DNA of 64,000 nt from Macrostomum lignano (lineage: Eukaryota). The position numbers were made by a program, and so were the translations under genes. Shown one piece after another: positions 7,535 to 44,787 of the stretch (the stretch's first letter is position 1; the number at the start of each line of letters is the position of its first letter). The stretch spans positions 1 through 64,000 of the forward strand of contig NIVC01000133.1 of assembly GCA_002269645.1 (NCBI GenBank), in the 5' to 3' direction. Below the pieces are notes generated by a model. That model saw nothing but the letters and a program-made list of their open reading frames with translations, did not search any database and had not been told where the DNA came from.

Positions 7535-8305
7535 CTGGAAATGTTTATTTTCTCGAAAATTAAGTAATTTAATTTAAACAAAAGAAAACACAGGTATTTT
7601 TTTAGATTGGGTAGCGTTTTAATAAAATGTACACAGATGCAACTCCTCTGTGGTGTACGTTAAATATATTGTATTTACCTTGTTGAACGCGAGCAAGATT
7701 GCATTTACGTATTGCATAAAATTACAGTAGTACAAATCCGACAGTAGTATAGTGGGTGCAGCTTTCGAGCATGTTATTTTTTCTGTGAAGTGTATGGATA
7801 AACTATTAAGAAATTTATTAGGCTTTTCTAAATATTTCTGTTATGAACGATCACGCCACATGTAGTGACGGTTAATACCAAAAAACGTATTGCTATTTAA
7901 TTTCTAAGAAAATAAAATGACCTTTCCGCCAATTTTTCCGCCAATATGAGCTCGCCTAACTCACTGGGGCGGGGGCGCACCGATTTGAAGTTAGCTATAC
8001 CGCAAAGCAAATAAGGCAATTTACAAGTGAACTGCATTAACACTGATCAATAGGTTCAGTTGGCAGCTCAGTGAATATACATGCACTGTTTATAGTTAAT
8101 CAAGTTGTTTCGCCCTGTTTTGAATCATCTGACAGCAGATGCCGCAAAAGGAAGTCGGATCGTTCTGCTCGAGGCTCTGGCTAAGAGACTGAACAACGAC
8201 TTGTCGGGACCTTAAAATTGCGGAGTTTTTACCTTTTTGCGAATTTAAGTAGCTCATATTTAATTATATTTAAATACAATCAAAAATAGATAGTTAAATA
8301 ATTAC

Positions 8306-11300
8306 CTGATTTTCCAATTCAACATTGAGCAGACTGATATTGCCAGTGATGACTATCCATCTGGCGTCCTTAGGAGAGATGTCAGCTCTGTAGCTGGAGA
8401 CTATTCGCTTGTTGACTACAAGCTGCAATGTAGCGGCTTCTTAAACTGTGATCACAATCTGTGCTCTGAACTAACAACCAGAGCACAGTGTTTTACTGAG
8501 GCTTGGAATGTTAGATTGAGGCTTGGAATGTTAGAATGAGGCTTGGAATGTTAGATTGAGGCTTGGAATGTTAGAATGAGGCTTGAAATGTTAGAATGAG
8601 GCTTGGAATGTTAGATTGAGGCTTGGAATGTTAGAATGAGGCTTGCAATTGAAGTATCAACTATCGGACAGGGAAATCAACTATCGGACAGGGAAATCAA
8701 CATTTGGACAGGGAAATCAACTATCGGACAGGATAAGCAACTATCGGACAGGGAAATCAACTATCGCACATGGTAAGCAACGATCGGACAGGATAAGTAA
8801 CTATCGGACAGGGTAAGCAACTATTGGACAGGGAAATCAACTATCGGACAGGATAAGCAACTATCGGACAGGGAAATCAACTATCGGACAGGATAAGCAA
8901 CTATCGGACAGGGTAAGCAACGATCGGACAGGATAAGCAACTATCGGACAGGGAAATCATCTATCGGAAATGGTAAGCAACGATCGGACAGGGTAAGCAA
9001 CGATCGGACAGGATAAGCAACTATCGGACAGGGTAAGCAACTATTGGACAGGGAAATCAACTATCGGACAGGATAAGCAACTATCGGACAGGGAAATCAA
9101 CTATCGGACAGGATAAGCAACTATCGGACAGGGAAATCAACTATCGCACATGGTAAGCAACGATCGGACAGGATAAGCAACTATCGGACAGGGTAAGCAA
9201 CTATTGGACAGGGAAATCAACTATCGGACAGGATAAGCAACTATCGGACAGGGAAATCAACTATCGGACAGGATAAGCAACTATCGGACAGGGTAAGCAA
9301 CGATCGGACAGGATAAGCAACTATCGGACAGGGAAATCATCTATCGGAAATGGTAAGCAACGATCGGACAGGGTAAGCAACGATCGGACAGGATAAGCAA
9401 CTATCGGACAGGGTAAGCAACTATTGGACAGGGAAATCAACTATCGGACAGGATAAGCAACTATCGGACAGGGAAATCAACTATCGGACAGGATAAGCAA
9501 CTATCGGACAGGGTAAGCAACGATCGGACAGGATAAGCAACTATCGGACAGGGAAATCAACTATCGGACATGGTAAGCAACGATCGGACAGGATAAGCAA
9601 CTATCGGACAGGATAAGCAACTATCGGACAGGGTAAGCAACTATCGGACAGAGAAATCAACGATCGGACAGGGAAATCAACTATCGGACAGGATAAGCAA
9701 CTATCGGACAGGGAAATCAACTATCGGACAGGATAAGCAACTATCGGACAGGGAAATCAACTATCGGACAGGGAAATCAACTATCGGACAGGGAAATCAA
9801 CTATCGGACAGGATAAGCAACTATCGGACAGGGAAATCAACTATCGGACAGGGAAATCAACTATCGGACAGGGAAATCAACTATCGGACAGGGAAATCAA
9901 CTATCGGACAGGGAAATCAACTATCGGACAGGGAAATCAACTATCGGACAGGGAAGTCAACTATCGGACAGGGAAATCAACTATCGGACAGGGAAATCAA
10001 CTATCGGACAGGGAAATCAACTATCGGACAGGGAAATCAACTATCGGACAGGATAAGCAACTATCGGACAGGATAAGCAACTATCGGACAGGGAAATCAA
10101 CGATCGGACAGGGATAAGCAACTATCGGACAGGGAAATCAACTATCGGACAGGGAAATCAACTATCGGACATGGAAATCAACGATCGGACAGGGAAATCA
10201 ACGATCGGACAGGGAAATCAACTATCGTACAGGGAAATCAACGATCGGACAGGGAAATCAACTATCGGACAGGGAAATCAACTATCGGACAGGGAAATCA
10301 ACTATCGGACAGGATAAGCAACTATCGGACAGGGAAATCAACTATCGGACAGGGAAATCAACTATCGGACAGGATAAGCAACTATCGGACAGGGAAATCA
10401 ACGATCGGACAGGGATAAGCAACTATCGGACAGGGAAATCAACTATCGGACAGGGAAATCAACGATCGGACAGGGAAATCAACTATCGGACAGGGAAATC
10501 AACTATCGGACAGGGAAATCAACTATCGGACAGGATAAGCAACTATCGGACAGGGAAATCAACGATCGGACAGGGATAAGCAACTATCGGACAGGGAAAT
10601 CAACTATCGGACAGGGAAATCAACGATCGGACAGGGAAATCAACGATCGGACAGGGAAATCAACTATCGGACAGGGAAATCAACGATCGGACAGGGAAAT
10701 CAACTATCGGACAGGGAAATCAACGATCGGACAGGGATAAGCAACTATCGGACAGGGAAATCAACTATCGGACAGGGAAATCAACGATCGGACAGGGAAA
10801 TCAACGATCGGACAGGGAAATCAACTATCGGACAGGGAAATCAACGATCGGACAGGGAAATCAACTATCGGACAGGGAAATCAACTATTGGACAGGGAAA
10901 TCAACTATCGGACAGGGAAATCAACTATCGGACAGGGAAATCAACTATCGGACAGGGAAATCAACTATCGGACAGGGAAATCAACTATCGGACAGGATAA
11001 GCAACTATCGGACAGGGAAATCAACGATCGGACAGGGATAAGCAACTATCGGACAGGGAAATCAACTATCGGACAGGGAAATCAACGATCGGACAGGGAA
11101 ATCAACGATCGGACAGGGAAATCAACTATCGGACAGGGAAATCAACGATCGGACAGGGAAATCAACTTTTTGCTTTGCCACTCACTTTGCAATCGCCGTT
11201 ATCCGCCAGCAGTAGGTCGATGGTTCGAATCTCGCTAAACAGCGGCACCGGGCACAGCTCAGCCACTCGAGTCTGGCGGGCGTCGTTCATCCAGGCCAGG

Positions 11301-14300
11301 GCCGCCTGCTGGCCGCTGTCGGTCAGGCAGAACTCGCAGATCAGCGGCTTGACGCCGTCCGGATCGGCGCCGATGGCCAGCGAAACGGTGCGGCTGCTGC
11401 AAATTGGAAATTCTCAAGAAAATGAGAACGTTTCCCATCGAAAGAAGCTAAGCTGATGGGCGCAATTTGCATGTCTCAAGCCGCGCACGGAATCGAACCC
11501 CGGGCACTTCTGCGCTGCAGAATCAGACAGACGCGTTAACCGCTGATCTACTTTGCCCTCATTTTTATTAAACATTAAAATAACATACACGTGTAAGACA
11601 TGCGTCATACTACTTGACAAGTAGCGTAGACTATCTAATTCGACTTTTTGAGGTAGCGCCCTACTTCATCAGTGGAAAACGGCTTGAACCACCAAGTTAA
11701 ACTGTACCGGGTTTGCTTGGTCGTTGCTTCCATATCTCTTCCAAACCTGATGTCTCTTTCATCTTAAGATTTTCTGTAAAAAGGCCAAACTGCATGGGAT
11801 ACTGAAATCTGGACCCTGGGCCTAATCGACACTTACGCTCCGTAGTTGCCCCCGTCGGTCTCGGCCAGGTCGGCCCCGTCCGACAGACCGAGACGGATCA
11901 ACCGGCCCGGCCGACTCGGATCCATCGGCGGCAGGCGATTGGTATAGGGAAGCCACAGGCTGGCTGGGAAGCTGACAGACAGAAAGGCGGTGGCGGCGCC
12001 AGCCAGGTGCAGATGAGTCACCAGGTCCGGGTCGATCCGGTGGCGCAGGCTGGCGTTGTGCCCGCTGTCCAACACTACGTAGAAGTCCTTCAAGCGTCGG
12101 ACGATCGTCGTCTCGAAGGCAAAGCCGTCCCTATCTTTTGCGTCGCTGCGGCTGGTGGCGTCCACTGCTTCGTCGCTCTGCTGACCGTTGACGATGGCGC
12201 TGAGGGCCAGACAGCCGACGGCGCCGCTGTCCGATTCTCTGCTGGGCGCCACCCGGGCAAGGAGGGCAAAGTCCGCTGAGCTCGGGTCAGCGCCGGTTCG
12301 AAGCGAAATTCGACAGTTGTTGCCGGCCGGCATCGAAGCGGCCGACGGCAGCAACCGGGCCCAGATTCGAATCTGGCTGCCTACTGGCTGCTGCTTGGGA
12401 AGAGCCGTCAGTGGATTGGCTCGCTGGAGGGAATGATGGGGCGAGGTAGTAAGTTCCGATTGGCTGAGCGGGTGCAGACACGATTCATCGGGCAGGGCTA
12501 TGGGTGAGGTAGTGAGCTCCGATTGGCTTAGCGGATGGCAGACACGATTCATCGGGCAGGGCTATGAGCGAGGTAGTGAGCTCCAATTGGCTGAGCGGAT
12601 AGCAGACACGATTCATCGAGCAGGGCTATAGGCGAGGTAGTGAGTTCTGATTGGACGGCGGCAAGATATGAGAGATTTTTTGTTAAAAATTGTTAATTGC
12701 AATTAGGCATGTGCTTTCTTAAAACAAGAATTTATAATTTCAATCTCTTACCATCTCCTTGATTTTGAAATCCTCCAGCATTAGATCGCCTTCAATGTAC
12801 AGGCTCTTCACTCTTCTAGCATCCAACTTCATCAAGTACGTCATTATGTACTCGCCATTAATATGAATCTGAATTCGGAGTTAACGAGAAATCTGCCTAA
12901 TTAAAACTCATTATTAATGCATTTCATACACAATAAACGAACACCGATCAGTCGATAATTCCTATTGGCACATATACTATAAATTACAAAATGTACTGTA
13001 CTTCCAGAAAATGTAGGCGTACAGTTTCCCCCATACTTCTCCAATACGGCAGCATTTAGTCCTTGAGTTCTGGATAATGGTTTTGTCTATGGTACTTCCG
13101 AGCGACAAATGGGTGGTTAGACGAAGGTCGGAACTCGGGATAATGGGTGGGGCACGAGTGTGCTAAATTCAGCAACGCCTAGATCACGCGCACAAGTCTA
13201 TGGCGTTGCTGGATTCAACGCAGCCTCCAGCCCATTTCTAGGAAAATAAAGTTTCGTGTCCTTCTACTTTAATTGCCTATGCAAGTACATTAAAATGGTC
13301 TGATCTATGTTGTCTAGTTCTATTATTAGACGCGGTGGATTAGCAGGTATCAGAGTGGAAAAACAGTCTGACCTAAAGACTACTTAAGAAACCTGAAACA
13401 TTAAACTACCCACATGCCTGTACATGCCCTACAAGGAGAATTCCAGGGCTATACTCGTACTTCTGCCTTCCTGTTAGCTGCGACTCCATTTTCGCCTTAA
13501 TTGGCTGCAGCACCCCTGAGAAACTCACCCGAACCACCTGGCCGTGAATTGTCAGCAAAACGCTGCGCAGTTTCGCCAGCTGGTTTAAACCGCGTTTCTC
13601 CATCTCCTTGACGAAGCCGCCACCGTCGTCGCCGCCGTTGCTGCTGCAAGTGTCGTCCAGATCGGCTCGACCTACCGTAGCTGTCAGGCTGGCGATGCTG
13701 AGCGAGCAGGTCATGGCCGCGCCGTCGGCCAGGCCGAACAGGAGGCCGGTGGAGCTGCTGTCCGGCCGCAGGCCGAGCCGCACAGATTCAACCAGGCTGA
13801 GCGGGCAGGCCAGGCGTTCGCGTAGCGGCAGCTCCAGGCGTTCGTGAAACTCCACGCTAGTGTACTCGCAGTCGGGGTGCAGCACCAGGTGAGTGAAGTC
13901 GGACACCGGAATGTGATGCGGTAACACGCATTCCGTATCGGCGAGAGCCGTCTGAAAACCGGTTGAAAAAATAGTTCGTCAGGTTAAACCTACGCCAACT
14001 CAATGCCAAGACAGATCCTTCCAGATTGCAAACAACTTTTCGTCGCCTTTCGAATTAAACAAGAGTTGGATGAAAAAAACGGTGGACTCCTCATTAAATC
14101 CTCTTCAAACTCCCAGCTGTTCTGGTCTGCGGCTACTCGTCAGATGCCCAAGAAGTAAGGTTAGAAATCTTACGCTGAGTCCCAGTCGCTTGAAACAAAT
14201 CACCAGACGAAACTCGTCGTTCTGCTTTGGTGACAGCAGCGCCTTCGCCTCGCAGACGGGTTGCCCCCCAATTAGCTGGCAGGTGTGCATCAGCGACGGC

Positions 14301-14575
14301 TGGTCGGCTCCGCCAGGGAAGGAAATCAGCAACTCGAAGGCCTGGGCACCGGGCGAGTAATCGAGATTTTCCAAAGACAATTTAAGCCTGAAGAGCAGCA
14401 GTGTGATTTTTACCAATATTTTAAACGCTTGTTCAGCGCATGAAAAACTATATTTAAAGATACATTTTAACAGTTAGTCTCACCCAGCTGAAGAGTAGTT
14501 GGTCATTCGGCCGTAAATCACAATGCTGTGTCCATACCGTATTTGCACTGGGAGTCGCGCTCGGAATGGAATTAT
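8306..14575 (-). CDS. Four tandem C-terminal galectin-fold (Gal-bind_lectin-like) domains, seven exons
   Basis: Galectin-like start motifs: IIPFRARLPVQIRYGHSIVIYGRM, LELPLRERL, NPLTALPKQQPVGSQIRIWARL..CRISLRTGADPSSADFALLARV, LWLPYTNRLP..PGRLIRLG. Galectin-like end motifs: IHINGEYIMTYLMKLDARRVKSLYIEGDLMLEDFKI, FYVVLDSGHNASLRHRIDPDLVTHLHLAG, LVVNKRIVSSYRADISPKDARWIVITGNISLLNVEL. Assigned by eye against the recalled galectin strand pattern. Confidence 0.72.
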
Positions 14576-17500
14576 CTGTATAGTTCAAAAATATATATAT
14601 AGCTTCATGTCACCTGTAGAATATCACAGGTAAAGGAGCTTTCAACTTATTCGCCGGAATGCAGCCCAAAGTAAAGCTCCATACCGAACCGACTGTTATC
14701 GACAACTTGTCGGACTGGTTGAAAAAAAATTCGGAGACATTCCACCTAGATCTAGGTCACATCCTTGTTCTCCCTCGATTTCCTATTCTGAGATATTCCA
14801 TCTAGGTCACATCCTTGTTCTCCCTCGATTTCCTATTCCGAGACATTCGATCTAGGTCACATCATTGCTCTCCCTCGATTTCCTATCCCGAGACATTCCA
14901 TTTAGGTTACATCCTTCTTCTTCCTCGATTTCCTATCCCGAGATATCCCATTTAGGTTACATCCTTGCTATCCCTCGATTTCCTATCTAAAAGAACTCTT
15001 ACCGGCTTCAGAGTTGAGAATCCTTTGGCATTTTTTCGCCGCTCCAAATCTTCAATGGCAGATTCGTTCGTCAGCTGGAACTCCAGAGTGTCCCCATGGC
15101 TGCCGTCGCCGAATTGCAGAGAATTGCTGAGCTCTCTGTCTGAGCCGGCTCGAGGCCCGTCCCCGCTAGGGCTGTTAAACGCCTCGCTTTGCCAGTGGTC
15201 TCCAGAGGGCTTTTTCCAGTTGACTTGCCGCCTACTCAACCTTAACGATGCTGGCTCAGCTGAGAACTTCTTAGCCAGTCGCTGTTTGAACGAATCTTCG
15301 CTACAGCTGCTGCTGTCGTCGCTGCTGCTGCCGTCAGTTTCGCTGCTGCAACCGGAGGCCAGACGGTCACCTTTCACAAATCCGCTGGCGCCTTGCAAGT
15401 TATAGGAACTGTATCGAAATACTCCGAACTTGGCAGCGTCTTGAGCCCTGGATGGCTTCTGATTCGCTCCAGGCATCTTGGCTAGTGTCGAAATCATAAC
15501 ATCAGTGCCGTTGGACATTATGGCATGGTGGTCTGCTTCTTCGACATGCGTGTTTGGACCGATCGGCTCCGGACTGCGACCATCCCGTAATTTGCTCTGC
15601 TCGGTCCATTTGGAATTGAGCGTAGCGTTGGTCTGATTAGCGGCAATCTATGAAGGAGTTACAAGAAAATCGCTTTTAGAGGCATTGCTTTAAAGCTGGA
15701 GCATTAAAATTTCATGCAAAGAATTTTTTCCGACGATATTTTTCCCATTAGTTTGTCTCATCAACTAAATCTCATCTCATCATCTAAATAAAAATATCGT
15801 AGTATATTTCCTTCGTAAACCTCAGCGGGAAAATCTTGTTCACCCTTTGAAACTATTGCTTCTCAATATCTTCGAATATACTAAATCATTTACTATAGGC
15901 GCCCTTGCGAGGCACATTTAAGGTAACGCATTTTTTATTAGAGGCAAAGGGGTTGTGTGCACCCTGGCGCACTTTAAGCGACATCAACACACAACCGGCG
16001 AAAGGCATTACTGCCCATTCCGCCGACTCCCCTGAGCAGGCATACAAGCGCGGATACGTACGCAGGCACACACTCACACAGGAGTGTACAGCGGCCCTAA
16101 CTTTATTTTATCGCTAGGCATGTACACTTCACTGTGCCTTGGGGGGTTGGCTCTCAAGGCCGTTAATTGCACGAGCAGAGCCAAGCCGAGATTCCAATTT
16201 AGCCCCAAATTAATGTGACTGCACTTGGAATCGAGCCTGGGTCGCTGGCACACCAGAGCCTGCGCTAGACCGCTGGGCTACGCCCCCCCCCCCCAAAAGA
16301 GACGATGCATACTGAAACAAAAATGATTTAGTAGATTAAAAAAAGCTTACACTGCCGCCATCAAAGAAGTACGGAGGCTCGTCATTGTCCGCCTCGCTGT
16401 CCTCGTCCTCACTGGCAGACAGGCGACCCGGCTGCTGGACAACATCATCCAACTGGCCACGAGTGCCTGTGTCGGCGCCTTCTGCTGCAGAACTGGCAGA
16501 CTCGATTACTGACTGGAGCGATTCTCTGGATTCACACTCTTGGCGCACCAGTGTTGGGGTTCCATCGAGCACTTTTGGCAAACTGATTTCATGCGCAGTT
16601 GTAGCGGCACTTATCTCAATTGCGTTCAATTCAGGATCTGAAGAATTTTCTGCTTGCTCTTGTTTAAGCTCTGCTTGTTGAACCTCGGTTTGGACAAGTG
16701 CCTTATCATTCGAGAGTTTGCTATCGTTGCTTAGAGGTGAAGAATCCCGCAAATTTTCGTTGTTGGAACGTGGCGAATTCGATTCTTCTAAGCTGTACGA
16801 CTTGCGTGAAGGCTGGTTGTCGTAGTAGTGAGAGACAGTACTCGAGGGTGAAACGGTATCTACCACGCTACTGTTAGTATTTGAGTCAAACGGCTTATCC
16901 TCGCTGTGAGCATCTTTAAAGCACGTTTTTTCTTCTTCTGATTCAATGTGTTCTGGCTGAAAGCCTCCCTGAGTGACAGTGTGTACAGACAAACTGTGAT
17001 TTTGATCCAATGACGCGGTCTCTGACAGAGGGGAGGCTCCTTCAAATTCAGGACTGTTTTGACTGGCGTGCGATGCAGTTGATTTATCCGATTCTTCAGC
17101 TAGGTTCCTGTCGAGCAAGCCTTTGACTGACCTTTCAGTTTGAAAAGTCACGTTTTCGACACCTGCAGCTGCTGGGGTTCTATTTGAAATATCTGTCGAC
17201 GTGTTGTCTAGACAAGTGAAATCCAACTTACTCATCGGATCCATGCCTTCTTTTATAGTCGGCTTTGCATAACTATAAGATGGCACGCTAGTGTTAGGAT
17301 TATCATTGAACTCAAGGCAGCGTGTTATATCTATGGCTTCACTTGGAAAATTAATTTTGTTAGTGCCTTTTTCAAGATCACTTGAAGCTTTCTCTTGCCC
17401 TGAAGACGCTTCCTGCAATTCCATCGAAATCTGTTGGTCCTCGTACTCGATCCGGACCTCATCGACGTCCTGGTCGAGGTGCTTCACCAAGCTCTTTATG

Positions 17501-35500: not shown

Positions 35501-38500
35501 GATCGGAGGCTCCGGCAATTCCATCGAAATCTGTTGGTCCTCGTACTCGATCCGGACCTCATCGACGTCCTGGTCGAGGTGCTTCACCAAGCTCTTTATG
35601 TCGTCGACTTCTGCTCCAATGGACTCATCGCGCTGCTCAGCATCAGTACCCTGCTGCAGCTTTCGAGCAAGCACGCTTTCCTCGGTCTCTTCAGCGAGAT
35701 CGGCTGACTGGCTTTCGTGACGAAGCTCTCGATCGGAGGCTCCGGCAATTCCATCGAAACCTGTTGGTCCTCGTACTCGATCCGGACCTCATCGACGTCC
35801 TGGTCGAGGTGCATCACCAAGCTCTTTATGTCGTCGACTTCTGCTCCAATGGACTCATCGCGCTGCTCAGCATCAGTAACCTGCTGCAGCTTTCGAGCAA
35901 GCACGCTTTCCTCGTTCTCTTCAGCGAGATCGGCTGACTGGCTTTCGTGACGAAGCTCTCGGATTGAGGGCTCCAAAATTTCGATTGACAGTTGCTGATC
36001 CTGTGTCGAAGCTTCTTTTGTTGCTGCACTGCTACTTCCGACTTGCTCCTGGTTGTCCTGTTCGCTACTTTTGGTTTGACTAACTGTATCTGGGTCTCTT
36101 GACATTGACGGCACTTGTGTTTCGTTAGTCTCGCTGTCATTTCTCTGTGCTAGTTGACTTGATTGCTTCCTACGGAAGCTCGCCTCGTTTTCCGCGTTTC
36201 CAGCTGTGTCCAAGTCGGAGACATTATACGATCCTCTGTGTCGCTTAAAAACACCCATGAACTTTCCGAACACGTTCTTTTTGTGCTTTGGTGGGTATGA
36301 TGACTCGAGTGGCATCGAGCTTTGAGAACCAGAGCTCTGACTTTTATCGTCGTGCGTTCCAGTCACACTTACACTGTGGGGTCTCGTCTGAGGTTTTTCT
36401 CTCTTTGCCGAGCTCTCACCAGATGTGTGTCGCAGCCTTACTTTTGATTCGATGGGCGGAAACTCTGCACTTCCCAAAGACAAGCGTTTTACTATTTTTG
36501 ATGACTTTGGCTCAGCCAGATCTATCGACCTACTCTCGTTTCTTTCGTCGACGGGTGCGTCCCTAATATGATGCAGGAGATCGTCTGACTGCCAGGATCG
36601 ATCGCTCTCCTTGGAAATTTGACTATCGCGATCAAACGAGTGCCCGTAGCGGCGAGGCTCGTGGATGATGGGCTCCGGCAATTCCATCGAAATCTGTTGG
36701 TCCTCGTATTCGATCCGGACCTCATCGATGTCCTGGTCGAGGTGCTTCACCAAGCTCTTTATGTCGTCGACTTCTGCTCCAATGGACTCATCGCGCTGCT
36801 CAGCATCAGTACCCTGCTGCAGCTTTCGAGCAGGCACGCTCTCCTCGGTCTCTTCAGCGAGATCGGCTGACTGGCTTTCGTGACGAAGCTCTCGGATCGG
36901 AGGCTCCGGCAATTCCATCGAAATCTGTTGGTCCTCGTACTCGATCCGGACCTCATCGACGTCCTGGTCGAGGTGCATCACTAAGCTCTTCATGTCGTCG
37001 ACTTCTGCTCCAATGGACTCATCGCGCTGCTCAGCATCAGTAACCTGCTGCAGCTTTCGAGCAAGCACGCTTTCCTCGGTCTCTTCAGCGAGATCGGCTG
37101 ACTGGCTTTCGTGACGAAGCTCTCGGATCTGAGGCTCCGGCAATTCCATCGAAACCTGTTGGTCCTCGTACTCGATCCGGACCTCATCGACGTCCTGGTC
37201 GAGGTGCATCACCAAGCTCTTTATGTCGTCGACTTCTGCTCCAATGGACTCATCGCGCTGCTCAGCATCAGTAACCTGCTGCAGCTTTCGAGCAAGCACG
37301 CTTTCCTCGGTCTCTTCAGCGAGATCGGCTGACTGGCTTTCGTGACGAAGCTCTCGGATCGGAGGCTCCGGCAATTCCATCGAAATCTGTTGGTCCTCGT
37401 ACTCGATCCGGACCTCATCGACGTCCTGGTCGAGGTGCATCACTAAGCTCTTTATGTCGTCGACTTCTGCTCCAATGGACTCATCGCGCTGCTCAGCATC
37501 AGTACCCTGCTGCAGCTTTCGAGCAAGCACGCTTTCCTCGGTCTCTTCAGCGAGATCGGCTGACTGGCTTTCGTGACGAAGCTCTCGGATCGGAGGCTCC
37601 GGCAATTCCATCGAAACCTGTTGGTCCTCGTACTCGATCCGGACTTCATCGACGTCCTGGTCGAGGTGCATCACCAAGCTCTTTATGTCGTCGACTTCTG
37701 CTCCAATGGACTCATCGCGCTGCTCAGCATCAGTAACCTGCTGCAGCTTTCGAGCAAGCACGCTTTCCTCGGTCTCTTCAGCGAGATCGGCTGACTGGCT
37801 TTCGTGACGAAGCTCTCGGATCGGAGGCTCCGGCAATTCCATCGAAATCTGTTGGTCCTCGTACTCGATCCGGACCTCATCGACGTCCTGGTCGAGGTGC
37901 ATCACTAAGCTCTTTATGTCGTCGACTTCTGCTCCAATGGACTCATCGCGCTGCTCAGCATCAGTACCCTGCTGCAGCTTTCGAGCAAGCACGCTTTCCT
38001 CGGTCTCTTCAGCGAGATCGGCTGACTGGCTTTCGTGACGAAGCTCTCGGATCGGAGGCTCCGGCAATTCCATCGAAACCTGTTGGTCCTCGTACTCGAT
38101 CCGGACCTCATCGACGTCCTGGTCGAGGTGCATCACCAAGCTCTTTATGTCGTCGACTTCTGCTCCAATGGACTCATCGCGCTGCTCAGCATCAGTAACC
38201 TGCTGCAGCTTTCGAGCAAGCACGCTTTCCTCGTTCTCTTCAGCGAGATCGGCTGACTGGCTTTCGTGACGAAGCTCTCGGATTGAGGGCTCCAAAATTT
38301 CGATTGACAGTTGCTGATCCTGTGTCGAAGCTTCTTTTGTTGCTGCACTGCTACTTCCGACTTGCTCCTGGTTGTCCTGTTCGCTACTTTTGGTTTGACT
38401 AACTGTATCTGGGTCTCTTGACATTGACGGCACTTGTGTTTCGTTAGTCTCGCTGTCATTTCTCTGTGCTAGTTGACTTGATTGCTTCCTACGGAAGCTC

Positions 38501-41500
38501 GCCTCGTTTTCCGCGTTTCCAGCTGTGTCCAAGTCGGAGACATTATACGATCCTCTGTGTCGCTTAAAAACACCCATGAACTTTCCGAACACGTTCTTTT
38601 TGTGCTTTGGTGGGTATGATGACTCGAGTGGCATCAAGCTTTGAGAACCAGAGCTCTGACTTTTATCGTCGTGCGTTCCAGTCACACTTACACTGTGGGG
38701 TCTCGTCTGAGGTTTTTCTCTCTTTGCCGAGCTCTCACCAGATGTGTGTCGCAGCCTTACTTTTGATTCGATGGGCGGAAACTCTGCACTTCCCAAAGAC
38801 AAGCGTTTTACTATTTTTGATGACTTTGGCTCAGCCAGATCTATCGACCTACTCTCGTTTCTTTCGTCGACGGGTGCGTCCCTAATATGATGCAGGAGAT
38901 CGTCTGACTGCCAGGATTGATCGCTCTCCTTGGAAATTTGACTATCGCGATCAACCGAGTGCCCGTAGCGGCGAGGCTCGTGGATGATGGGCTCCGGCAA
39001 TTCCATCGAAATCTGTTGGTCCTCGTACTCGATCCGGACCTCATCGATGTCCTGGTCGAGGTGCATCACCAAGCTCTTTATGTCGTCGACTTCTGCTCCA
39101 ATGGACTCATCGCGCTGCTCAGCATCAGTACCCTGCTGCAGCTTTCGAGCAGGCACGCTCTCCTCGGTCTCTTCAGCGAGATCGGCTGACTGGCTTTGGT
39201 GACGAAGCTCTCGGATCGGAGGCTCCGGCAATTCCATCGAAATCTGTTGGTCCTCGTACTCGATCCGGACCTCATCGACGTCCTGGTCGAGGTGCATCAC
39301 TAAGCTCTTCATGTCGTCGACTTCTGCTCCAATGGACTCATCGCGCTGCTCAGCATCAGTAACCTGCTGCAGCTTTCGAGCAAGCACGCTTTCCTCGGTC
39401 TCTTCAGCGAGATCGGCTGACTGGCTTTCGTGACGAAGCTCTCGGATCTGAGGCTCCGGCAATTCCATCGAAACCTGTTGGTCCTCGTACTCGATCCGGA
39501 CCTCATCGACGTCCTGGTCGAGGTGCATCACCAAGCTCTTTATGTCGTCGACTTCTGCTCCAATGGACTCATCGCGCTGCTCAGCATCAGTAACCTGCTG
39601 CAGCTTTCGAGCAAGCACGCTTTCCTCGGTCTCTTCAGCGAGATCGGCTGACTGGCTTTCGTGACGAAGCTCTCGGATCGGAGGCTCCGGCAATTCCATC
39701 GAAATCTGTTGGTCCTCGTACTCGATCCGGACCTCATCGACGTCCTGGTCGAGGTGCTTCACCAAGCTCTTTATGTCGTCGACTTCTGCTCCAATGGACT
39801 CATCGCGCTGCTCAGCATCAGTACCCTGCTGCAGCTTTCGAGCAAGCACGCTTTCCTCGGTCTCTTCAGCGAGATCGGCTGACTGGCTTTCGTGACGAAG
39901 CTCTCGGATCGGAGGCTCCGGCAATTCCATCGAAACCTGTTGGTCCTCGTACTCGATCCGGACCTCATCGACGTCCTGGTCGAGGTGCATCACCAAGCTC
40001 TTTATGTCGTCGACTTCTGCTCCAATGGACTCATCGCGCTGCTCAGCATCAGTAACCTGCTGCAGCTTTCGAGCAAGCACGCTTTCCTCGTTCTCTTCAG
40101 CGAGATCGGCTGACTGGCTTTCGTGACGAAGCTCTCGGATTGAGGGCTCCAAAATTTCGATTGACAGTTGCTGATCCTGTGTCGAAGCTTCTTTTGTTGC
40201 TGCACTGCTACTTCCGACTTGCTCCTGGTTGTCCTGTTCGCTACTTTTGGTTTGACTAACTGTATCTGGGTCTCTTGACATTGACGGCACTTGTGTTTCG
40301 TTAGTCTCGCTGTCATTTCTCTGTGCTAGTTGACTTGATTGCTTCCTACGGAAGCTCGCCTCGTTTTCCGCGTTTCCAGCTGTGTCCAAGTCGGAGACAT
40401 TATACGATCCTCTGTGTCGCTTAAAAACACCCATGAACTTTCCGAACACGTTCTTTTTGTGCTTTGGTGGGTATGATGACTCGAGTGGCATCGAGCTTTG
40501 AGAACCAGAGCTCTGACTTTTATCGTCGTGCGTTCCAGTCACACTTACACTGTGGGGTCTCGTCTGAGGTTTTTCTCTCTTTGCCGAGCTCTCACCAGAT
40601 GTGTGTCGCAGCCTTACTTTTGATTCGATGGGCGGAAACTCTGCACTTCCCAAAGACAAGCGTTTTACTATTTTTGATGACTTTGGCTCAGCCAGATCTA
40701 TCGACCTACTCTCGTTTCTTTCGTCGACGGGTGCGTCCCTAATATGATGCAGGAGATCGTCTGACTGCCAGGATCGATCGCTCTCCTTGGAAATTTGACT
40801 ATCGCGATCAAACGAGTGCCCGTAGCGGCGAGGCTCGTGGATGATGGGCTCCGCAATTCCATCGAAATCTGTTGGTCCTCGTATTCGATCCGGACCTCAT
40901 CGATGTCCTGGTCGAGGTGCTTCACCAAGCTCTTTATGTCGTCGACTTCTGCTCCAATGGACTCATCGCGCTGCTCAGCATCAGTACCCTGCTGCAGCTT
41001 TCGAGCAGGCACGCTTTCCTCGGTCTCTTCAGCGAGATCGGCTGACTGGCTTTGGTGACGAATCTCTCGGATCGGAGGCTCCGGCAATTCCATCGAAATC
41101 TGTTGGTCCTCGTACTCGATCCGGACCTCATCGACGTCCTGGTCGAGGTGCATCACTAAGCTCTTCATGTCGTCGACTTCTGCTCCAATGGACTCATCGC
41201 GCTGCTCAGCATCAGTACCCTGCTGCAGCTTTCGAGCAAGCACGCTTTCCTCGGTCTCTTCAGCGAGATCGGCTGACTGGCTTTCGTGACGTAGCTCTCG
41301 GATCGAAGGCTCCGAAATTTCGATTGACAGTTGCTGATCCTGTGTCGAAGCTTCTTTTGTTGCTGCACTGCTACTTCCGACTTGCTCCTGGTTGTCCTGT
41401 TCGCTACTTTTGGTTTGACTAACTGTATCTGGGTCTCTTGACATTGACGGCACTTGTGTTTCGTTAGTCTCGCTGTCATTTCTCTGTGCTAGTTGACTTG

Positions 41501-44500
41501 ATTGCTTCCTACGGAAGCTCGCCTCGTTTTCCGCGTTTCCAGCTGTGTCCAAGTCGGAGACATTATACGATCCTCTGTGTCGCTTAAAAACACCCAGGAA
41601 CTTTCCGAACACGTTCTTTTTGTGCTTTGGTGGGTATGATGACTCGAGTGGCATCGAGCTTTGAGAACCAGAGCTCTGACTTTTATCGTCGTGCGTTCCA
41701 GTCACACTTACACTGTGGGGTCTCGTCTGAGGTTTTTCTCTCTTTGCCGAGCTCTCACCAGATGTGTGTCGCAGCCTTACTTTTGATTCGATGGGCGGAA
41801 ACTCTGCACTTCCCAAAGACAAGCGTTTTACTATTTTTGATGACTTTGGCTCAGCCAGATCTATCGACCTACTCTCGTTTCTTTCGTCGACGGGTGCGTC
41901 CCTAATATGATGCAGGAGATCGTCTGACTGCCAGGATCGATCGCTCTCCTTGGAAATTTGACTATCGCGATCAAACGAGTGCCCGTAGCGACGAGGCTCG
42001 TGGATGATAGGCTCCGGCAATTCCATCGAAACCTGTTGGTCCTCGTACTCGATCCGGACCTCATCGACGTCCTGGTCGAGGTGCTTTACCAAGTTCTTTA
42101 TGTCGTCGACTTCTGCTCCAATGGACTCATCGCGCTGCGCAGCATCAGTACCCTGCTGCAGCTTTCGAGCAGGCACGCTTTCCTCGGTCTCTTCAGCGAG
42201 ATCGGCTGACTGGCTTTCGTGACGAAGCTCTCGGATCGGAGGCTCCGGCAATTCCATCGAAACCTGTTGGTCCTCGTACTCGATCCGGACCTCATCGACG
42301 TCCTGGTCGAGGTGCATCACCAAGCTCTTTATGTCGTCGACTTCTGCTCCAATGGACTCATCGCGCTGCTCAGCATCAGTGCCTTGCTGCTGTTCTCGAA
42401 TAGACGTGGTGTCTTCGGTGGGATTCAATAGCGTTGTCGATGGCAATCCACTGGATTTTTCGTCTTTGTTTTGGGGTTGTTTTTGCTGTAATTGATGAAG
42501 TTTTGAGAATTTCATCATAGATTTGATCGATGATAGGGTTCTGCTGTGGCTGAGATGGCTTTTATGTTTTCGCCTAAGTTTTGGGGATTTACTGCGTTGC
42601 TGCTCATATTTAAATAATCGTATTTCTTCTTTGCTTGGACGCTCGTCAACTGTCACTGCGAGACATTCATAGGTGCCGATTTGGATACTCATAGTTTCGT
42701 TTTTTCTTTGAAAATTCTTGATGAGGGATGTTTCTACACCAGTTTCAATCTTGTTGTCGTCGTCATATGCTTTGGATACGATTTCTCTGCCAGTTCGCAA
42801 CATGACTGTCTCAATTCCTTCCTTTGCTGGATCGTCTAATTCCAACCAGGCAGACTCAATGACGTCTTTACCTACGTTGTTTGCTGACGTTTTCCTGACG
42901 TTCTCCTGAGCTTTCGCGTTGGCTTCATTAACGTTAACTGTTTGATGCGTGTCTCGTTTGTACAAAGCTGTTGAAAATTTCGGCTCAATGAAAGTTTTCG
43001 AATCTACCGGCTCAAATTCTACCACGCTGCTGAAGTTTGAGCTTGGTTTGATGTAGGCCGTGTCTGCGTTCCTAAGTTGACATCGTCGTAGCCTTGCATT
43101 CTCGGCATCAAGATCCGATTTCGGCATCGTTTGAACACTGCCATGCGAGATTTCGTGGTTCAGTCTATCGTCATTTTTGAGTTCGCATTCGCTTTCTTCG
43201 CTGAAAATGGGGATCGGCTTCCAGATTGAGTTCTCAACTCTAGGCAGTGAGAGGCGGAGTCGCTTGACGTGACTCGGCGTGCCGGGCTGCCTTGCCGAAT
43301 GTACTGTAATTTGGCGCATAGAATTGTCTATAAGTTAAGCGTGAAGATGATTAAAATTGATAACAGCCTGGCAGAAGCTCACCGAGCTGGACATTTAAAT
43401 ACGGGTTCTCCGGTTCTGTGGCAACTTTTGGCTCTTCGGAGTCGCAAATCTCCAGCTCGGTGAAGTCGGCCTCTCCGCCCAGTATAACGGTGCAGATTGC
43501 CGAGTAGTTCCCGTTGTGGCTGAGCTCCGCCAGGTGCTTTTCTTGTAGGCTTATCTAAAAAATTAATCACATTTCTATGGTGCGCTCTCAGACTACTTGC
43601 TGATTCAAATGATCGTCTCTTTGATTAGAATATTTTGAAGCCAGATTTATCGTATCAATATTGCAATTGCAACGTATTGTAAGACTTTATTCGGCGAAGT
43701 ACATCAGGTACTTGTATCTGCTCCGGTTTATTCAGAGAATCTACAGAGGTCCATTCAGTAGTTTCTAGTGGTCCTTGATGTGATTGTTCACCCATTGTCC
43801 ACAACAGTTAGTCTGCATTCACAATCAAACGGTTCCTGTCCAGTTTAGGACTTTTCCCCGAACGGGACCGGGTGAAGCGTTCGAAACTGTTAGGTTTACA
43901 TCTGGGAATGCCACAATCTTTTTTTTCGAACGTGCCAACCTGCTGAAGCAGAACCAGACCGAAATCGCTTGATTGTGAAAGCAGCATTACTCTTGATGAA
44001 ATTTCAATCTCCCCTCAGGTTTGAGTACTCAACACATAGCCAGAAAATTATTTCATGACTGTTCCGTCAATGGTTCAATTAATTCTACGACTATTTATAC
44101 CTGTCCCCAATCGCTGGTAGTGACAATTTCCTGTGGTGAAATCGCAAAAAATCAACCAAACAGCTAAACATTGGTTGTTTGAGGCTCAAACCAATTGGGT
44201 AAGACTTGCGGTAAAAATAAGTTTGTGTTCTTGATTTAGTGTGATTCGGACGCTACTCAGTAGTTACAGTATTACGCTCGTATTACAGGTTAAGATAGAC
44301 ATCAAACGCATTTTTCTGTCTTTTCTGGCGTAAATAGATGTCAAAATAATTTTGAAAAACATATCATATAGATAGCTATGAAATCATTTTGGCTAACTCA
44401 CATCGTAGCCGAGCGGTTGCACGGCAACTTTGATGACAAATGAGTACGGCGTTACAATCACTTCGCTGAGTCTTCCGCGCCTGTCTGTCTGCTTGCCTTT

Positions 44501-44787
44501 GCTTCGATAACTGATCTCAAACTGGCCGTTGCTGCTCAAGCTAATGTTTATAGATTCTAACTGCCAGTTTTCGGCTGAGAGGGTGACATTGAGGCTGAAA
44601 AGAAAACAGTGGGCATTGACTGCTACGGTCTAGCGGTTTCTATGGAGTGTGTAAGAAAAAGTGGCTTGAAAAGTAAAACAACAAACAAGTATAACAAATC
44701 TACTTACTACTGTCCGTGCAGAATGCCTTTGGCTACGACACCTTCGCCAACAAACAGCTCGCTGGACATCTTGTGCTCTATGTGGCT
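8306..44787 (-). CDS. Giant (~9,950 aa or more) repeat protein with tandem galectin-fold domains at both ends; 5' and 3' ends unresolved
   Basis: Phase-consistent GT-AG exon chain, 5' to 3': 44787-44708, 44594-44402, 43554-43383, 43327-16351, 15647-15003, 14575-14484, 14387-14174, 13951-13529, 12868-12752, 12423-11837, 11396-11186, 8422-8306. Every junction keeps frame once 10 single-base deletions in the giant exon are restored. Confidence 0.8.
8497..8645. repeat. 20-bp minisatellite (TGAGGCTTGGAATGTTAGA(T/A)), ~7.5 copies, intronic
   Basis: Direct tandem units visible; abuts the larger 20-bp array. Confidence 0.95.
8656..11167. repeat. 20-bp minisatellite (ATCAACTATCGGACAGGGAA and variants), ~125 copies, filling intron 8423-11185
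   Basis: Continuous tandem array with variants GGAAAT/GATAAG/GGTAAG and CTAT/CGAT. Rare variants recur 380 bp apart. Confidence 0.97.
11481..11560 (-). mobile_element. tRNA-derived SINE-like head (Pol III A and B boxes), intronic
   Basis: Minus strand reads TAGATCAGCGG (A box) ... GGGTTCGATTCC (B box) at tRNA-like spacing. No convincing complete cloverleaf. Confidence 0.55.
12441..12655. repeat. 64-bp tandem repeat, ~3.4 copies, immediately upstream of the acceptor of exon 12423-11837
   Basis: CGATTCATCG recurs at 12481, 12545 and 12609. Confidence 0.9.
14750..14988. repeat. 50-bp tandem repeat, ~5 copies, intronic
   Basis: T(C/T)TAGGT(C/T)AC recurs at 14751, 14801, 14851, 14901 and 14951. 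Confidence 0.92.
15003..15647 (-). CDS. Ser/Asp-rich low-complexity linker exon between the giant exon and the C-terminal galectin-fold domains
   Basis: 645 nt, phase 0-0, acceptor TTCATAG and donor GTAAGA. Joins YFFDGGS|IAANQT upstream and STLKP|IIPFRARLP downstream. Confidence 0.75.
16221..16290 (-). mobile_element. tRNA-derived SINE-like head / pseudo-tRNA, intronic
   Basis: Minus strand GGCGTAGCCCAGCGGTCTAGCGC (A box) ... CCAGCGACCCAGGCTCGATTCC (B-box-like). Confidence 0.5.
16351..43327 (-). CDS. Single giant exon (~26,987 nt corrected, ~8,995 codons): unique flanks plus a ~25 kb coding tandem array
   Basis: The ORFs of 873, 1687, 256, 104, 720, 295, 1061, 729, 513 and 2811 aa tile the interval in register and are separated only by 1-bp deletions. 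Acceptor CTTATAG at 43328; donor GTAAGC at 16350. No substitution-derived stop codon seen in the coding frame. Confidence 0.82.
17410..42385 (-). repeat. Coding tandem array: ~65 full plus 1 partial 231-bp (77-aa) units interleaved with 14 copies of a 702-bp (234-aa) cassette
   Basis: Cassette-to-cassette spacings are 702+231n minus deletions: 2319, 2319, 1395, 2086, 1857, 1856, 933, 1163, 2318, 1853, 2319, 1857, 1163. Confidence 0.95.
43383..44787 (-). CDS. N-terminal galectin-fold domain (three exons: 44787-44708, 44594-44402, 43554-43383)
   Basis: Spliced product SHIEHKMSSELFVGEGVVAKGILHGQY|LNVTLS..SINISLSSNGQFEISYRSKGKQTDRRG..PYSFVIKVAVQPLGYD|ISLQEKHLAELSHNGNYSAICTVILGGEADFTELEI is ~128 aa with galectin-like strand order. 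Donors are GTAAGT, GTGAGT and GTGAGC. Confidence 0.68.

What the first reader, a model, noticed from the sequence alone, without database searches (positions are those of the whole stretch)
8306..44787. Megadalton-scale protein: galectin-fold domains at both ends of a ~9,000-aa acidic repeat rod
Seen: twelve exons join in frame to ~9,950 codons, giving at least one galectin-fold domain, then the giant repeat exon and a Ser-rich linker, then four tandem galectin-fold domains. The ORF track shows only disconnected fragments. Established: galectins usually have 1-2 CRDs (up to 4 in some molluscs) joined by short linkers. I know of no described family with a linker of this size, but could not search. 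Inference: a very long bivalent tether or spacer (titin- or mucin-like scale) whose span is set by repeat number. No signal peptide or TM segment is seen in the recovered part, so it may be cytoplasmic or non-classically secreted.
Basis: partly seen in the sequence, partly recalled or inferred. Interest (0 to 1): 0.9.

Follow-up and report, generated by a model that had tools for sequence, protein, structure and literature searches.

The report
Giant galectin-ended repeat protein gene
A real flatworm (Macrostomum lignano) gene would encode a protein of about 10,000 residues, with galectin-like domains at both ends of a huge, recently amplified acidic repeat linker, but only if ten one-base gaps in the assembly are errors; the public annotation gives just its last 3,568 residues.

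Summary
The window is contig NIVC01000133.1 (positions 1-64000) of the M. lignano Mlig_3_7 assembly. All introns are GT-AG, and independent public gene models reproduce the N-terminal and C-terminal exon joins.

The 26,977-nt "giant exon" is not one ORF as given. Ten single-base deletions split it into 11 frame-shifted pieces. Restoring them gives 8,995 codons with no stop. Their contexts (mostly CC/GG runs), their uniform direction and the assembly method (PacBio CLR, Canu, Pilon) point to consensus errors. This is unproven.

The linker is not a uniform rod:
- About 66 acidic 77-aa units, each predicted as one ~52-residue helix with a four-heptad hydrophobic stripe plus a flexible joint.
- 14 disorder-like 234-aa Ser-rich spacers.

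The four C-terminal domains are galectin-family by profile. The N-terminal domain probably is too. The canonical sugar-binding residues are replaced in the two domains that can be aligned.

A M. lignano paralogue has the same end-to-end architecture and shared intron positions, with a ~1,000-aa non-repetitive linker.

Verdict: a real gene, a new variant of a known kind. Its size depends on the frameshifts being artefacts and its function is unknown. Moderate interest.

The parts
44862..44945 (-). Optional upstream coding exon (MMKFREPDRASELNTEHRVTPESQWSDS).
   Evidence: Used in ML2-assembly gene models P0004 and P0018. GTAAGT donor at 44861, with a stop codon just upstream of the ORF.
44708..44787 (-). 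Exon beginning at the acceptor at 44787, with an ATG at 44769 (MSSELFVGEGVVAKGILHGQ-). Start of the N-terminal galectin-like domain.
   Evidence: TTTCAG acceptor and GTAAGT donor; split codon TA|C = Y.
44402..44594 (-). Exon for the middle of the N-terminal domain (LNVTLSAENWQLESINISL...VQPLGYD).
   Evidence: GT-AG borders. The same join is in P0018. The intron position after 'YD' is conserved in the paralogue.
43383..43554 (-). Exon for the end of the N-terminal domain (ISLQEKHLAEL...GGEADFTELEI...NVQL).
   Evidence: This part aligns to the C-terminal half of the galectin-3 CRD and to Pfam PF00337 positions 82-130.
16351..43327 (-). Giant exon of 26,977 nt as assembled; 26,987 nt (8,995 codons) after restoring ten missing bases.
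   Evidence: An alternative acceptor 24 nt downstream (43303) is used in the ML2 models.
42390..43327 (-). Unique N-terminal part of the giant exon (~312 codons, near-neutral charge, no Pfam domain).
   Evidence: Covered by P0004 and P0018.
17416..42389 (-). Repeat array: about 66 copies of a 231-nt / 77-aa acidic unit (net charge -15) in runs of 1-7, separated by 14 copies of a 702-nt / 234-aa Ser-rich spacer.
   Evidence: Units are on average 96.8% identical. Each unit is predicted as a ~52-residue helix and the spacer has low pLDDT. Heptad stripe I40-V44-I47-V51-L54-V58-V61-Y65.
24812..40853 (-). Span holding the ten single-base deletions that break the frame, at about 40853, 35731, 35023, 34809, 34555, 32391, 31638, 28513, 26276 and 24812.
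   Evidence: All are a lost C or G, mostly in CC, GG or GGG runs. Some contexts recur, also in the second gene copy L001.
16351..17415 (-). Unique C-terminal part of the giant exon (355 codons, acidic and Ser/Thr-rich, no Pfam domain).
   Evidence: Present in P0002, P0003, P0016 and P0019.
15003..15647 (-). Linker exon (215 aa, includes the Ser-rich stretch).
   Evidence: Retained whole in the GenBank model P0019. The ML2 models splice out part of it.
14174..14575 (-). Two exons (14575-14484 and 14387-14174) encoding most of galectin-like domain 1.
   Evidence: hhalign of D1 against a canonical CRD gives 93.5%. PDB galectins hit profile positions 1-136.
12752..13951 (-). Two exons (13951-13529 and 12868-12752) encoding the end of domain 1 and domain 2.
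   Evidence: Best Pfam PF00337 stretch lies at the end of domain 2.
11837..12423 (-). Single exon encoding galectin-like domain 3 and the start of domain 4.
   Evidence: phmmer match to the fish lgals4 CRDs, E=9e-19. PDB galectin-7/-16 hit positions 279-406.
11186..11396 (-). Exon for the middle of galectin-like domain 4.
8306..8422 (-). Exon for the end of domain 4 (LVVNKRIVSSYR...NISLLNVELENQ).
   Evidence: The homologous exon in the paralogue is also 117 nt and also follows a long intron.
8099..8210 (-). Alternative terminal mini-exons. 8210-8181 (VPTSRCSVS*) is the GenBank model and resembles the paralogue's AATPSCCIN*. 8176-8099 is used in the ML2 models.
8497..11167 (.). 20-bp minisatellites (7.7 and 125 copies) filling the last long intron. 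Not coding.
   Evidence: Spliced out in all models.

Best explanation
This is one real, transcribed M. lignano gene. GenBank annotates only its 3' third, as BOX15_Mlig001996g2.

Its true product is most likely a single cytoplasmic chain of about 9,950-10,000 aa (1.1 MDa, pI ~4.5), built as follows:
- A compact galectin-like domain at the N-terminus.
- A ~9,300-aa linker.
- Four abutting galectin-family domains at the C-terminus.

The ten frame breaks are most likely uncorrected PacBio consensus deletions in a near-identical tandem array that short reads could not polish. This is inferred, not shown.

The linker arose by very recent tandem amplification inside the long disordered linker of an older M. 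lignano family with the layout N-domain, ~1,000-aa linker, four galectin domains. It consists of:
- About 66 acidic modules, each a ~52-residue helix carrying a four-heptad hydrophobic stripe plus a flexible Pro/acidic joint.
- 14 disordered Ser-rich spacers.

Most likely mode of action (inferred): a long, flexible, polyanionic tether or scaffold. Its two ends bind ligands through degenerate galectin folds, probably not beta-galactosides, because the sugar-contact residues are replaced where alignment is possible. Its reach scales with repeat number. The heptad stripes may pair, within or between chains, to stiffen or bundle it.
For: Identity and annotation:
- The window equals NIVC01000133.1 positions 1-64000.
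- The annotated CDS runs 24621->8181 and starts at the first ATG after the last frameshift.

Gene model:
- All introns are GT-AG.
- The N-terminal joins are reproduced by the ML2-assembly models P0004 and P0018.
- The C-terminal joins are reproduced by P0002, P0003, P0016 and P0019.
- Paralogue P0011 links a homologous N-domain (BLASTP E=5e-9), a linker and four galectin domains in one CDS, with shared intron positions.

Frameshifts:
- Ten in the window and four in the second copy L001. All are 1-nt deletions, with no insertions and no nonsense codons.
- They lie mostly in CC/GG/GGG runs, with recurrent contexts.
- The assembly was PacBio + Canu 1.4 + Pilon (PMC5730564).

Domains:
- PF00337 at 37.8 bits, above the 22.1 cut-off.
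- The paralogue has four PF00337 stretches, E=2.6e-28.
- PDB profile hits are all galectins.
- hhalign N vs D1 69%; D1/D3 vs a canonical CRD 88-94%.

Linker:
- Composition and charge-hydropathy plot.
- AF2 model: unit helices at pLDDT 70-88, joints and spacers around 30.
- Heptad run reached by only 8 of 20,000 shuffles.
- Units 96.8% identical.

Lineage restriction:
- phmmer against 1.84 billion representatives found only M. lignano relatives plus one fish galectin.
Against: - As assembled, the ORF is broken ten times. No read-level or RNA evidence was available to show these are errors.
- No transcript or protein model spans the array.
- Repeat copy number in a CLR assembly of 97%-identical units is unreliable. 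36% of Mlig_3_7 scaffolds are reported chimeric (PMC10733133).
- Constraint on the units is weak: 18 synonymous vs 39 non-synonymous variants, against 21% synonymous expected.
- N-domain homology is only moderate (E ~0.01-0.1).
- AF2 failed on the C-terminal domains. The repeat model is single-sequence.
- The tether function is pure inference. Nothing is known about expression site, ligands or localisation.
Confidence: 0.55

Rival explanations
1. The frameshifts are real. This copy, one of about three subgenome copies in a neopolyploid, is decaying. It yields at most truncated products: an N-terminal protein of ~1,000 aa ending after the first shift, and/or the annotated 3,568-aa C-terminal protein from an internal start. 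No megadalton protein exists from this locus.
For: - The sequence as given has ten frame breaks.
- The second copy L001 has four.
- Two or three breaks recur at the same unit position. That could reflect a real variant unit spread by duplication.
- Selection on the units is weak.
- Redundant subgenome copies exist (PMC10733133).
Against: - 14 of 14 breaks are 1-nt deletions of C or G, mostly in short homopolymers (two-sided sign test, my arithmetic: ~1e-4).
- There are no insertions, no out-of-frame multi-base indels and no nonsense substitutions in ~9,000 codons.
- The only longer indel is in frame (51 nt).
- All unique coding parts are intact.
- This is the known residual error mode of CLR assemblies in regions where short-read polishing cannot map uniquely (assembly method; error mode from my own knowledge).
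Confidence: 0.17
2. The gene is real and open, but the array length is an assembly artefact (over-expanded or collapsed), or most of the array is not in the mature mRNA. The real protein would then be much shorter or longer than ~10,000 aa, and the megadalton figure carries no weight.
For: - Units are 97% identical and arranged in irregular higher-order blocks.
- The two assembled copies have different block patterns.
- Many Mlig_3_7 scaffolds are chimeric.
- The ML2 models are fragmentary.
Against: - Two independent contigs each carry more than 20 kb of array.
- No GT-AG intron can be placed to remove the array while keeping the frame, other than the whole exon.
- The paralogue's equivalent exon is also a large single linker exon of 2,037 nt.
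Confidence: 0.18
3. The N-terminal exons and the repeat plus C-terminal part are separate transcription units. Two genes have been fused by the reader.
For: - GenBank annotates only the 3' part, and no gene is called over 24622-34621.
- The ML2 assembly has separate N-terminal and C-terminal models.
Against: - The N-terminal models P0004 and P0018 already read through exon 3 into ~200 codons of the giant exon.
- The frame is continuous from there to the C-terminus once the deletions are restored.
- Paralogue P0011 has both ends in one CDS with the same intron positions.
- The split models are explained by the frameshifts and by assembly gaps.
Confidence: 0.07

Closest known systems
M. lignano paralogues BOX15_Mlig025793g1 (P0011), BOX15_Mlig013397g1/g2 (P0006, P0010), A0A1I8GPB3 (P0005)
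   Same: - Same end-to-end layout: homologous N-terminal domain (E=5e-9), long low-complexity linker, four galectin-family domains (30-35% identity, E=6e-62 and 7e-37).
- Intron positions are conserved, including the 117-nt penultimate exon and a 9-codon last exon.
   Different: - The paralogue linker is ~1,000 aa, Q/S/K-rich and non-repetitive, in two exons (2,037 + 732 nt).
- It has no 77-aa or 234-aa modules.
- Its domain 1 still keeps W..E.R.
Tandem-repeat-type galectins (galectin-8, galectin-4; nematode Toxascaris leonina galectin, PDB 4hl0/5glt)
   Same: - Best PDB sequence matches, E=5e-12 to 3e-10, including two-domain matches.
- PF00337 is above the gathering score.
- Several CRD-like domains in one chain.
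- No signal peptide.
   Different: - Five domains instead of two.
- About 9,300 aa lie between the first and second domain, against tens of residues in known tandem-repeat galectins (my own knowledge).
- The canonical H-N-R / N / W-E-R residues are replaced in domains 1 and 3.
Multi-CRD galectins (mollusc four-CRD galectins, from my own knowledge; predicted 12-CRD lgals4 of the fish Myxocyprinus asiaticus, P0007)
   Same: Arrays of abutting galectin domains. Domain 3 matches the fish CRDs at E=9e-19.
   Different: Those proteins keep the HFNPR...W..E motif and have short linkers. None has a giant non-lectin repeat insert.
Mlig-ap1 / Mlig-ap2 adhesive proteins of M. lignano (5,407 and 14,794 aa; PMC6410801)
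   Same: Same species. Giant proteins with large internal repeats and carbohydrate- or protein-interaction domains. They were also fragmented into several transcripts in earlier assemblies.
   Different: Those are secreted gland products, extremely basic (Lys/Arg-rich), Cys-rich, with C-type lectin, vWD, EGF and TSP domains. This protein is acidic, has no signal peptide and shares no domains with them.
Long segmented coiled-coil tethers (golgins and similar). A functional analogy only, from my own knowledge.
   Same: Very long, mostly helical or disordered chains with hinge-like breaks and binding modules at both ends. No TM segment or signal peptide in many of them.
   Different: No sequence relation. 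Here the heptad stretches are only ~4 heptads per 77-aa unit, the net charge is strongly negative, and the end domains are galectin-like.

Membership tests
Galectins (PF00337; classically defined by shared CRD sequence elements plus beta-galactoside affinity) | Significant sequence match of the C-terminal domains to the galectin CRD profile | tested here: met
   - PF00337 at 37.8 bits against a cut-off of 22.1, E=1.6e-9, on the four-domain region.
- A profile of the cassette hits only galectins in the PDB, best E=5e-12.
- Paralogue P0005, aligned over all four domains, has four PF00337 stretches, E=2.6e-28.
Galectins (PF00337) | The N-terminal domain is also a galectin CRD homologue | tested here: inconclusive
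   - PF00337 is the only Pfam family reported, but at E=0.11 and 12.4 bits, below the cut-off.
- A two-sequence profile gives 37 PDB hits, all galectins, best E=0.0098, covering only the C-terminal half.
- hhalign to domain 1: 69%, E=4.4e-5.
- The single sequence finds no PDB hit.
Galectins (PF00337) | Conserved sugar-contact residues (His-x-Asn-x-Arg on S4, Asn on S5, Trp-x-x-Glu-x-Arg on S6) | tested here: not met
   - In the hhalign alignments to a canonical CRD, domain 1 has G/A/Q, Q, V/A/A at these positions. Domain 3 has L/R/A, S, Q/D at the positions that could be placed.
- Domains 2, 4 and the N-domain cannot be aligned reliably.
- Paralogue domain 1 keeps only W..E.R.
Galectins (PF00337) | Beta-galactoside binding | not testable with these tools
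   Needs recombinant domains and glycan-array or lactose-column assays.
Galectins (PF00337) | Beta-sandwich fold shown by a 3D model | tested here: inconclusive
   - AF2 without an alignment gave mean pLDDT 34 for the four-domain region, so no fold search was meaningful.
Galectins (PF00337) | No signal peptide; synthesis in the cytosol | tested here: met
   - Both candidate N-termini (MMKFREPDRASEL..., MSSELFVGEG...) are polar.
- No 19-residue window exceeds Kyte-Doolittle 1.5 in 9,966 aa.
- No dedicated signal-peptide predictor was available.
Tandem-repeat-type galectins | CRDs joined by a short linker (tens of residues) | tested here: not met
   About 9,300 residues separate the N-domain from domain 1. 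Domains 1-4 abut directly.
Mucins / secreted giant repeat proteins (including Mlig-ap1/2) | Signal peptide, Pro/Thr/Ser-rich or Lys/Arg-rich repeats, Cys-rich flanking domains | tested here: not met
   - No signal peptide.
- The unit is 30% Asp+Glu and 10% Ser+Thr.
- No vWD, C8, TIL or EGF hits.
- Comparison with PMC6410801.
Titin-like modular giants | Ig/FN3 (or other folded) domain arrays | tested here: not met
   - No Pfam family above cut-off in the unit or the spacer.
- Both fall on the disordered side of the charge-hydropathy plot.
- AF2 gives single helices, not folded domains.

The most novel reading that the evidence does not exclude
The chain is really made full-length (~10,000 aa, 1.1 MDa), which would make it one of the largest animal proteins. 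Its ~66 heptad-bearing helices zip two or more chains into a segmented, hinge-rich polyanionic cable. Sugar-blind galectin folds act as grapples at both ends. The result would be a micrometre-range intracellular tether or ruler whose span is set by a rapidly evolving repeat number. The ~1,000-aa-linker paralogue would serve as a natural short control.
Probability: 0.15. Interest if true: 0.7.

Novelty: new variant of a known kind. Interest (0 to 1): 0.45.

Why it matters
If the frame breaks are artefacts, the public annotation hides about two thirds of a ~10,000-aa protein behind assembly indels. That would be a concrete case of long-read consensus errors truncating a giant gene.

Biologically, it would extend the galectin-domain repertoire in three ways:
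- A five-domain, sugar-motif-less form.
- A first linker about 100 times longer than any I know of.
- A very recent origin, by tandem amplification inside a disordered linker.

A same-genome paralogue keeps the short linker, so this is a natural experiment on linker length.

M. lignano supports in situ hybridisation, RNAi and transgenesis (PMC5730564), so function is directly testable.

The interest is limited for four reasons:
- The family is so far seen only in M. lignano.
- The repeats are under weak constraint.
- No expression or ligand data exist.
- The headline size depends on an unverified correction.

Tried and rejected
- The word-indexed protein search with a concatenated C-terminal query returned nothing, although P0003 is in that database. 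I treat this as a false negative of the prefilter.
- An exact look-up of the neighbouring 584-aa ORF found nothing, because the annotated product is a 618-aa form.
I therefore assumed the structure tool would refuse the spliced N-domain, and it was not modelled.
- AF2 on the four C-terminal domains without an alignment gave pLDDT 34. No fold search was run, because it would be meaningless.
- The single-sequence N-domain had no PDB hit. A two-sequence profile was needed.
- Pfam on the repeat unit and spacer gave only sub-threshold hits to coiled-coil-type and DUF families. DUF7084 scored 16.9 bits against a cut-off of 27. I did not use these.
- Literature: no paper holds Mlig001996 or Mlig005900, nor do the held supplements of PMC5730564. 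No paper links M. lignano with a galectin gene.
- Rfam found nothing in the window.
- Rejected readings:
  - Introns or programmed frameshifting at the ten breaks. They are 1-nt gaps at ten non-slippery sites.
  - A dispersed satellite. The second locus is a second gene copy that ends in the same unique C-terminal sequence.
  - A mucin-like, titin-like or adhesive-protein identity (see membership tests).

Full report
**Origin of the window**

The reverse complement of locus L002 matches window 1-34621 exactly, so the window is positions 1-64000 of contig NIVC01000133.1. That contig belongs to the Macrostomum lignano Mlig_3_7 assembly, GCA_002269645.1. The assembly was built from PacBio reads with Canu 1.4 and polished with Pilon using Illumina and RNA-seq reads (PMC5730564). 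The species is a neopolyploid with three subgenomes that differ by about 1.4-2.4% (PMC10733133). This explains why several near-identical copies and gene models of this locus exist.

**Check of the observation**

The gene lies on the minus strand. So do all other borders, once split codons are assigned. The exons are:

| Exon (window coordinates, minus strand) | Content |
|---|---|
| 44945-44862 | Optional upstream exon |
| 44787-44708 | ATG at 44769 |
| 44594-44402 | N-terminal domain, middle |
| 43554-43383 | N-terminal domain, end |
| 43327-16351 | Giant exon |
| 15647-15003 | Ser-rich linker |
| 14575-14484 | Domain 1 |
| 14387-14174 | Domain 1 |
| 13951-13529 | Domain 1 end, domain 2 |
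| 12868-12752 | Domain 2 |
| 12423-11837 | Domain 3, start of domain 4 |
| 11396-11186 | Domain 4 |
| 8422-8306 | Domain 4 end |
| One of three short 3' ends | See |

Independent public models reproduce these joins:
- The ML2-assembly proteins P0004 and P0018 cover the N-terminal exons and read about 200 codons into the giant exon.
- P0002, P0003 and P0016 (ML2) and P0019 (GenBank) cover the last repeats, the unique tail, the Ser-rich linker exon and all C-terminal exons.

**The giant exon is not one ORF as assembled**

It consists of 11 stop-free stretches whose frames step 2>1>0>2.... I aligned every repeat interval to the repeat consensus. The breaks are ten single-base deletions, at about 40853, 35731, 35023, 34809, 34555, 32391, 31638, 28513, 26276 and 24812.

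Putting one base back at each site gives 26,987 nt. That is 2 bases completing the split codon from exon 3, plus exactly 8,995 codons with no stop, ending in phase 0 at 16351.

The conceptual protein is 9,966 aa, 1.12 MDa, pI 4.5 and net charge about -1,090, with no TM-like window. Depending on which 5' and 3' exon variants are used, the length is 9,943-10,000 aa.

The GenBank CDS (BOX15_Mlig001996g2, PAA89866.1, 3,568 aa, window 24621->8181) begins at the first ATG after the last frameshift. No gene is called over the upstream array as far as the look-up reached (window 24622-34621).

**Are the frameshifts real?**

A second gene copy (L001, contig NIVC01000183.1, BOX15_Mlig005900g3) shows the same picture. 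It has four breaks in 21.6 kb, again all 1-nt deletions, plus one in-frame 51-nt insertion.

Points favouring assembly error:
- All 14 events remove a C or G, mostly from CC, GG or GGG runs.
- Some contexts recur in different units and on different contigs: GATCCGAG three times, CATCCACG twice, CACGAAAG twice.
- There are no insertions, no out-of-frame longer indels and no nonsense codons in about 9,000 codons.
- The unique coding parts are intact.
- This is the expected residue of CLR consensus errors where short reads multi-map and polishing fails. That is my inference from the method and general knowledge.

I put about 80% on artefact. It cannot be settled without reads.

**Anatomy of the linker**

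After 312 unique codons, the array (42389-17416) holds about 66 copies of a 231-nt / 77-aa unit. The units come in runs of 1-7, separated by 14 copies of a 702-nt / 234-aa spacer. A unique acidic tail of 355 codons follows.

| Feature | 77-aa unit | 234-aa spacer |
|---|---|---|
| Composition | 30% Asp+Glu, net charge -15 | 23% Ser+Thr, near neutral |
| Charge-hydropathy plot | Disordered side | Disordered side |
| AF2, single sequence | One ~52-residue helix, pLDDT 70-88, plus a ~25-residue joint at pLDDT ~30-45 | Mostly pLDDT ~30 |

The end domains fall on the folded side of the charge-hydropathy plot. The AF2 run covered two units, one spacer and two units, and gave no inter-helix packing (pTM 0.19).

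Inside the unit helix, I40-V44-I47-V51-L54-V58-V61-Y65 form eight consecutive a/d heptad positions. Only 8 of 20,000 shuffles reach this.

So "rod" is not supported. A segmented chain of short coiled-coil-competent helices with flexible joints and disordered spacers fits better.

The array is young:
- Units are 96.8% identical on average.
- Variants show only a mild excess of synonymous changes: 18 synonymous and 39 non-synonymous, against 21% synonymous expected.

A long ORF in such an array is partly automatic. However, all module lengths are multiples of three, and the frame is continuous with the unique coding flanks.

**The end domains**

C-terminal cassette:
- The spliced four-domain region passes Pfam's galectin threshold (PF00337, 37.8 bits against 22.1, E=1.6e-9).
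- An exhaustive phmmer search of 1.84 billion representative proteins found only five matches: P0003 itself, a 101-aa repeat fragment (P0008), two M. lignano paralogues aligned over all four domains (E=6e-62 and 7e-37), and a 12-CRD fish lgals4 (E=9e-19 to domain 3).
- Paralogue P0005 has four PF00337 stretches (E=2.6e-28).
- A three-sequence profile of the cassette hits only galectins among its 60 best PDB matches, apart from one weak non-galectin hit at E=0.018. The best are a nematode tandem galectin at E=5e-12 and galectin-8 at E=3e-10 over two domains.
- Profile-profile comparison groups D1 with D3 and with a canonical CRD (88-94%), and D2 with D4 (77%). This suggests a duplicated two-domain module.

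N-terminal domain (weaker evidence):
- PF00337 is the only Pfam family reported, at E=0.11.
- A profile made with the paralogue's N-domain gives 37 PDB hits, all galectins, best E=0.0098.
- hhalign to D1 gives 69% over 97 columns.

Sugar-binding residues: at the canonical contact positions, domains 1 and 3 have none of H-N-R, N or W-E-R. Classical beta-galactoside binding is therefore unlikely. This is an inference.

**One gene or two?**

Paralogue P0011 (BOX15_Mlig025793g1) settles the architecture by homology. One transcript-based CDS carries:
- A domain homologous to our N-domain (BLASTP E=5e-9).
- About 1,000 aa of non-repetitive low-complexity linker.
- The four galectin domains.

Its intron positions match ours. 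The intron after "YD" in the N-domain is shared. It has a large linker exon plus a second linker exon. The 117-nt penultimate exon also follows a long intron, and the last exon has 9 codons (AATPSCCIN against our VPTSRCSVS).

This supports the GenBank 3' end (8210-8181). It also indicates that our giant array is an expansion inside a pre-existing linker.

**Mechanism**

The steps that are shown and the steps that are inferred are as follows.

| Status | Step |
|---|---|
| Shown | Gene structure; repeat anatomy; galectin-family C-terminal cassette; conserved family architecture; absence of hydrophobic leader or TM segment |
| Inferred | The breaks are artefacts; one ~1.1-MDa cytosolic chain is made; it acts as a long, flexible, strongly anionic tether or scaffold with ligand-binding, probably non-lectin, galectin folds at both ends; heptad stripes may pair to bundle or stiffen it; reach scales with repeat number |

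No expression, localisation or ligand information was found.

**Comparison and novelty**

It belongs to the galectin-domain superfamily by sequence. It fails the sugar-motif criterion, and it fails the short-linker criterion of tandem-repeat galectins. It is unrelated to the species' other giants, Mlig-ap1 and Mlig-ap2, which are secreted and basic.

The locus is already in GenBank and UniProt, as a truncated "hypothetical / galectin domain-containing" protein. No paper in the library describes it.

I rate it a new variant of a known kind. Interest is moderate, held back by four things: the unverified frame correction, the uncertainty in array length, the weak constraint, and the restriction to a single species.

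Noticed in passing
window 3080-4834 (+), annotated product 618 aa: Neighbouring convergent gene encoding an RBR/IBR-type E3 ubiquitin ligase (Pfam IBR, E=5e-15). The same neighbour is listed next to BOX15_Mlig001996g2 in the public record.
   Followed up: partly
window 8497-8649 and 8656-11167: 20-bp minisatellites (7.7 and 125 copies, 89-93% matches) fill most of the gene's last long intron. The homologous intron of the paralogue is also long (3.6 kb).
   Followed up: partly
window 12439-12654 and 14750-14987: Further intronic minisatellites in the same gene: a 64-bp unit (3.4 copies) and a 50-bp unit (4.8 copies).
   Followed up: no
window 55993-56454, 57177-57880, 58159-58501, 58803-59057, 59830-60245, 62037-63043: A cluster of 29-37-bp minisatellites (up to 35 copies, 95-97% matches) with strong negative GC skew in part of the region. 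They create long spurious Pro/Ser-rich ORFs on the plus strand.
   Followed up: no
window 61524-61985 (-): ORF with a sub-threshold match to Ribosomal_S18 (E=0.0054, 17.2 bits against a cut-off of 21). Possibly an exon of a mitochondrial ribosomal protein S18 gene.
   Followed up: no
window 45922-46216: A perfect 147-bp tandem duplication (100% identity) in the AT-rich region about 1 kb upstream of the gene's first coding exon.
   Followed up: no
locus L003 19373-27176 (+): The paralogue's downstream neighbour is a MACPF-domain gene (769-aa product, runs off the end of the locus).
   Followed up: no
The word-indexed protein search missed P0003 with a 447-aa query that is nearly identical to it over hundreds of residues. 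It found P0003 only through a 12%-coverage repeat match. A 'no hit' from that tool is not reliable for this locus.
   Followed up: partly
window 19726-21351 (-), spacer residues 'KHKKNVFGKFMGVFKRHRG': Each of the 14 spacers carries a short basic and hydrophobic motif, part of which AF2 models as a helix (FGKFMGVFKR). It could be a membrane-binding or acidic-partner-binding element. Not analysed further.
   Followed up: no
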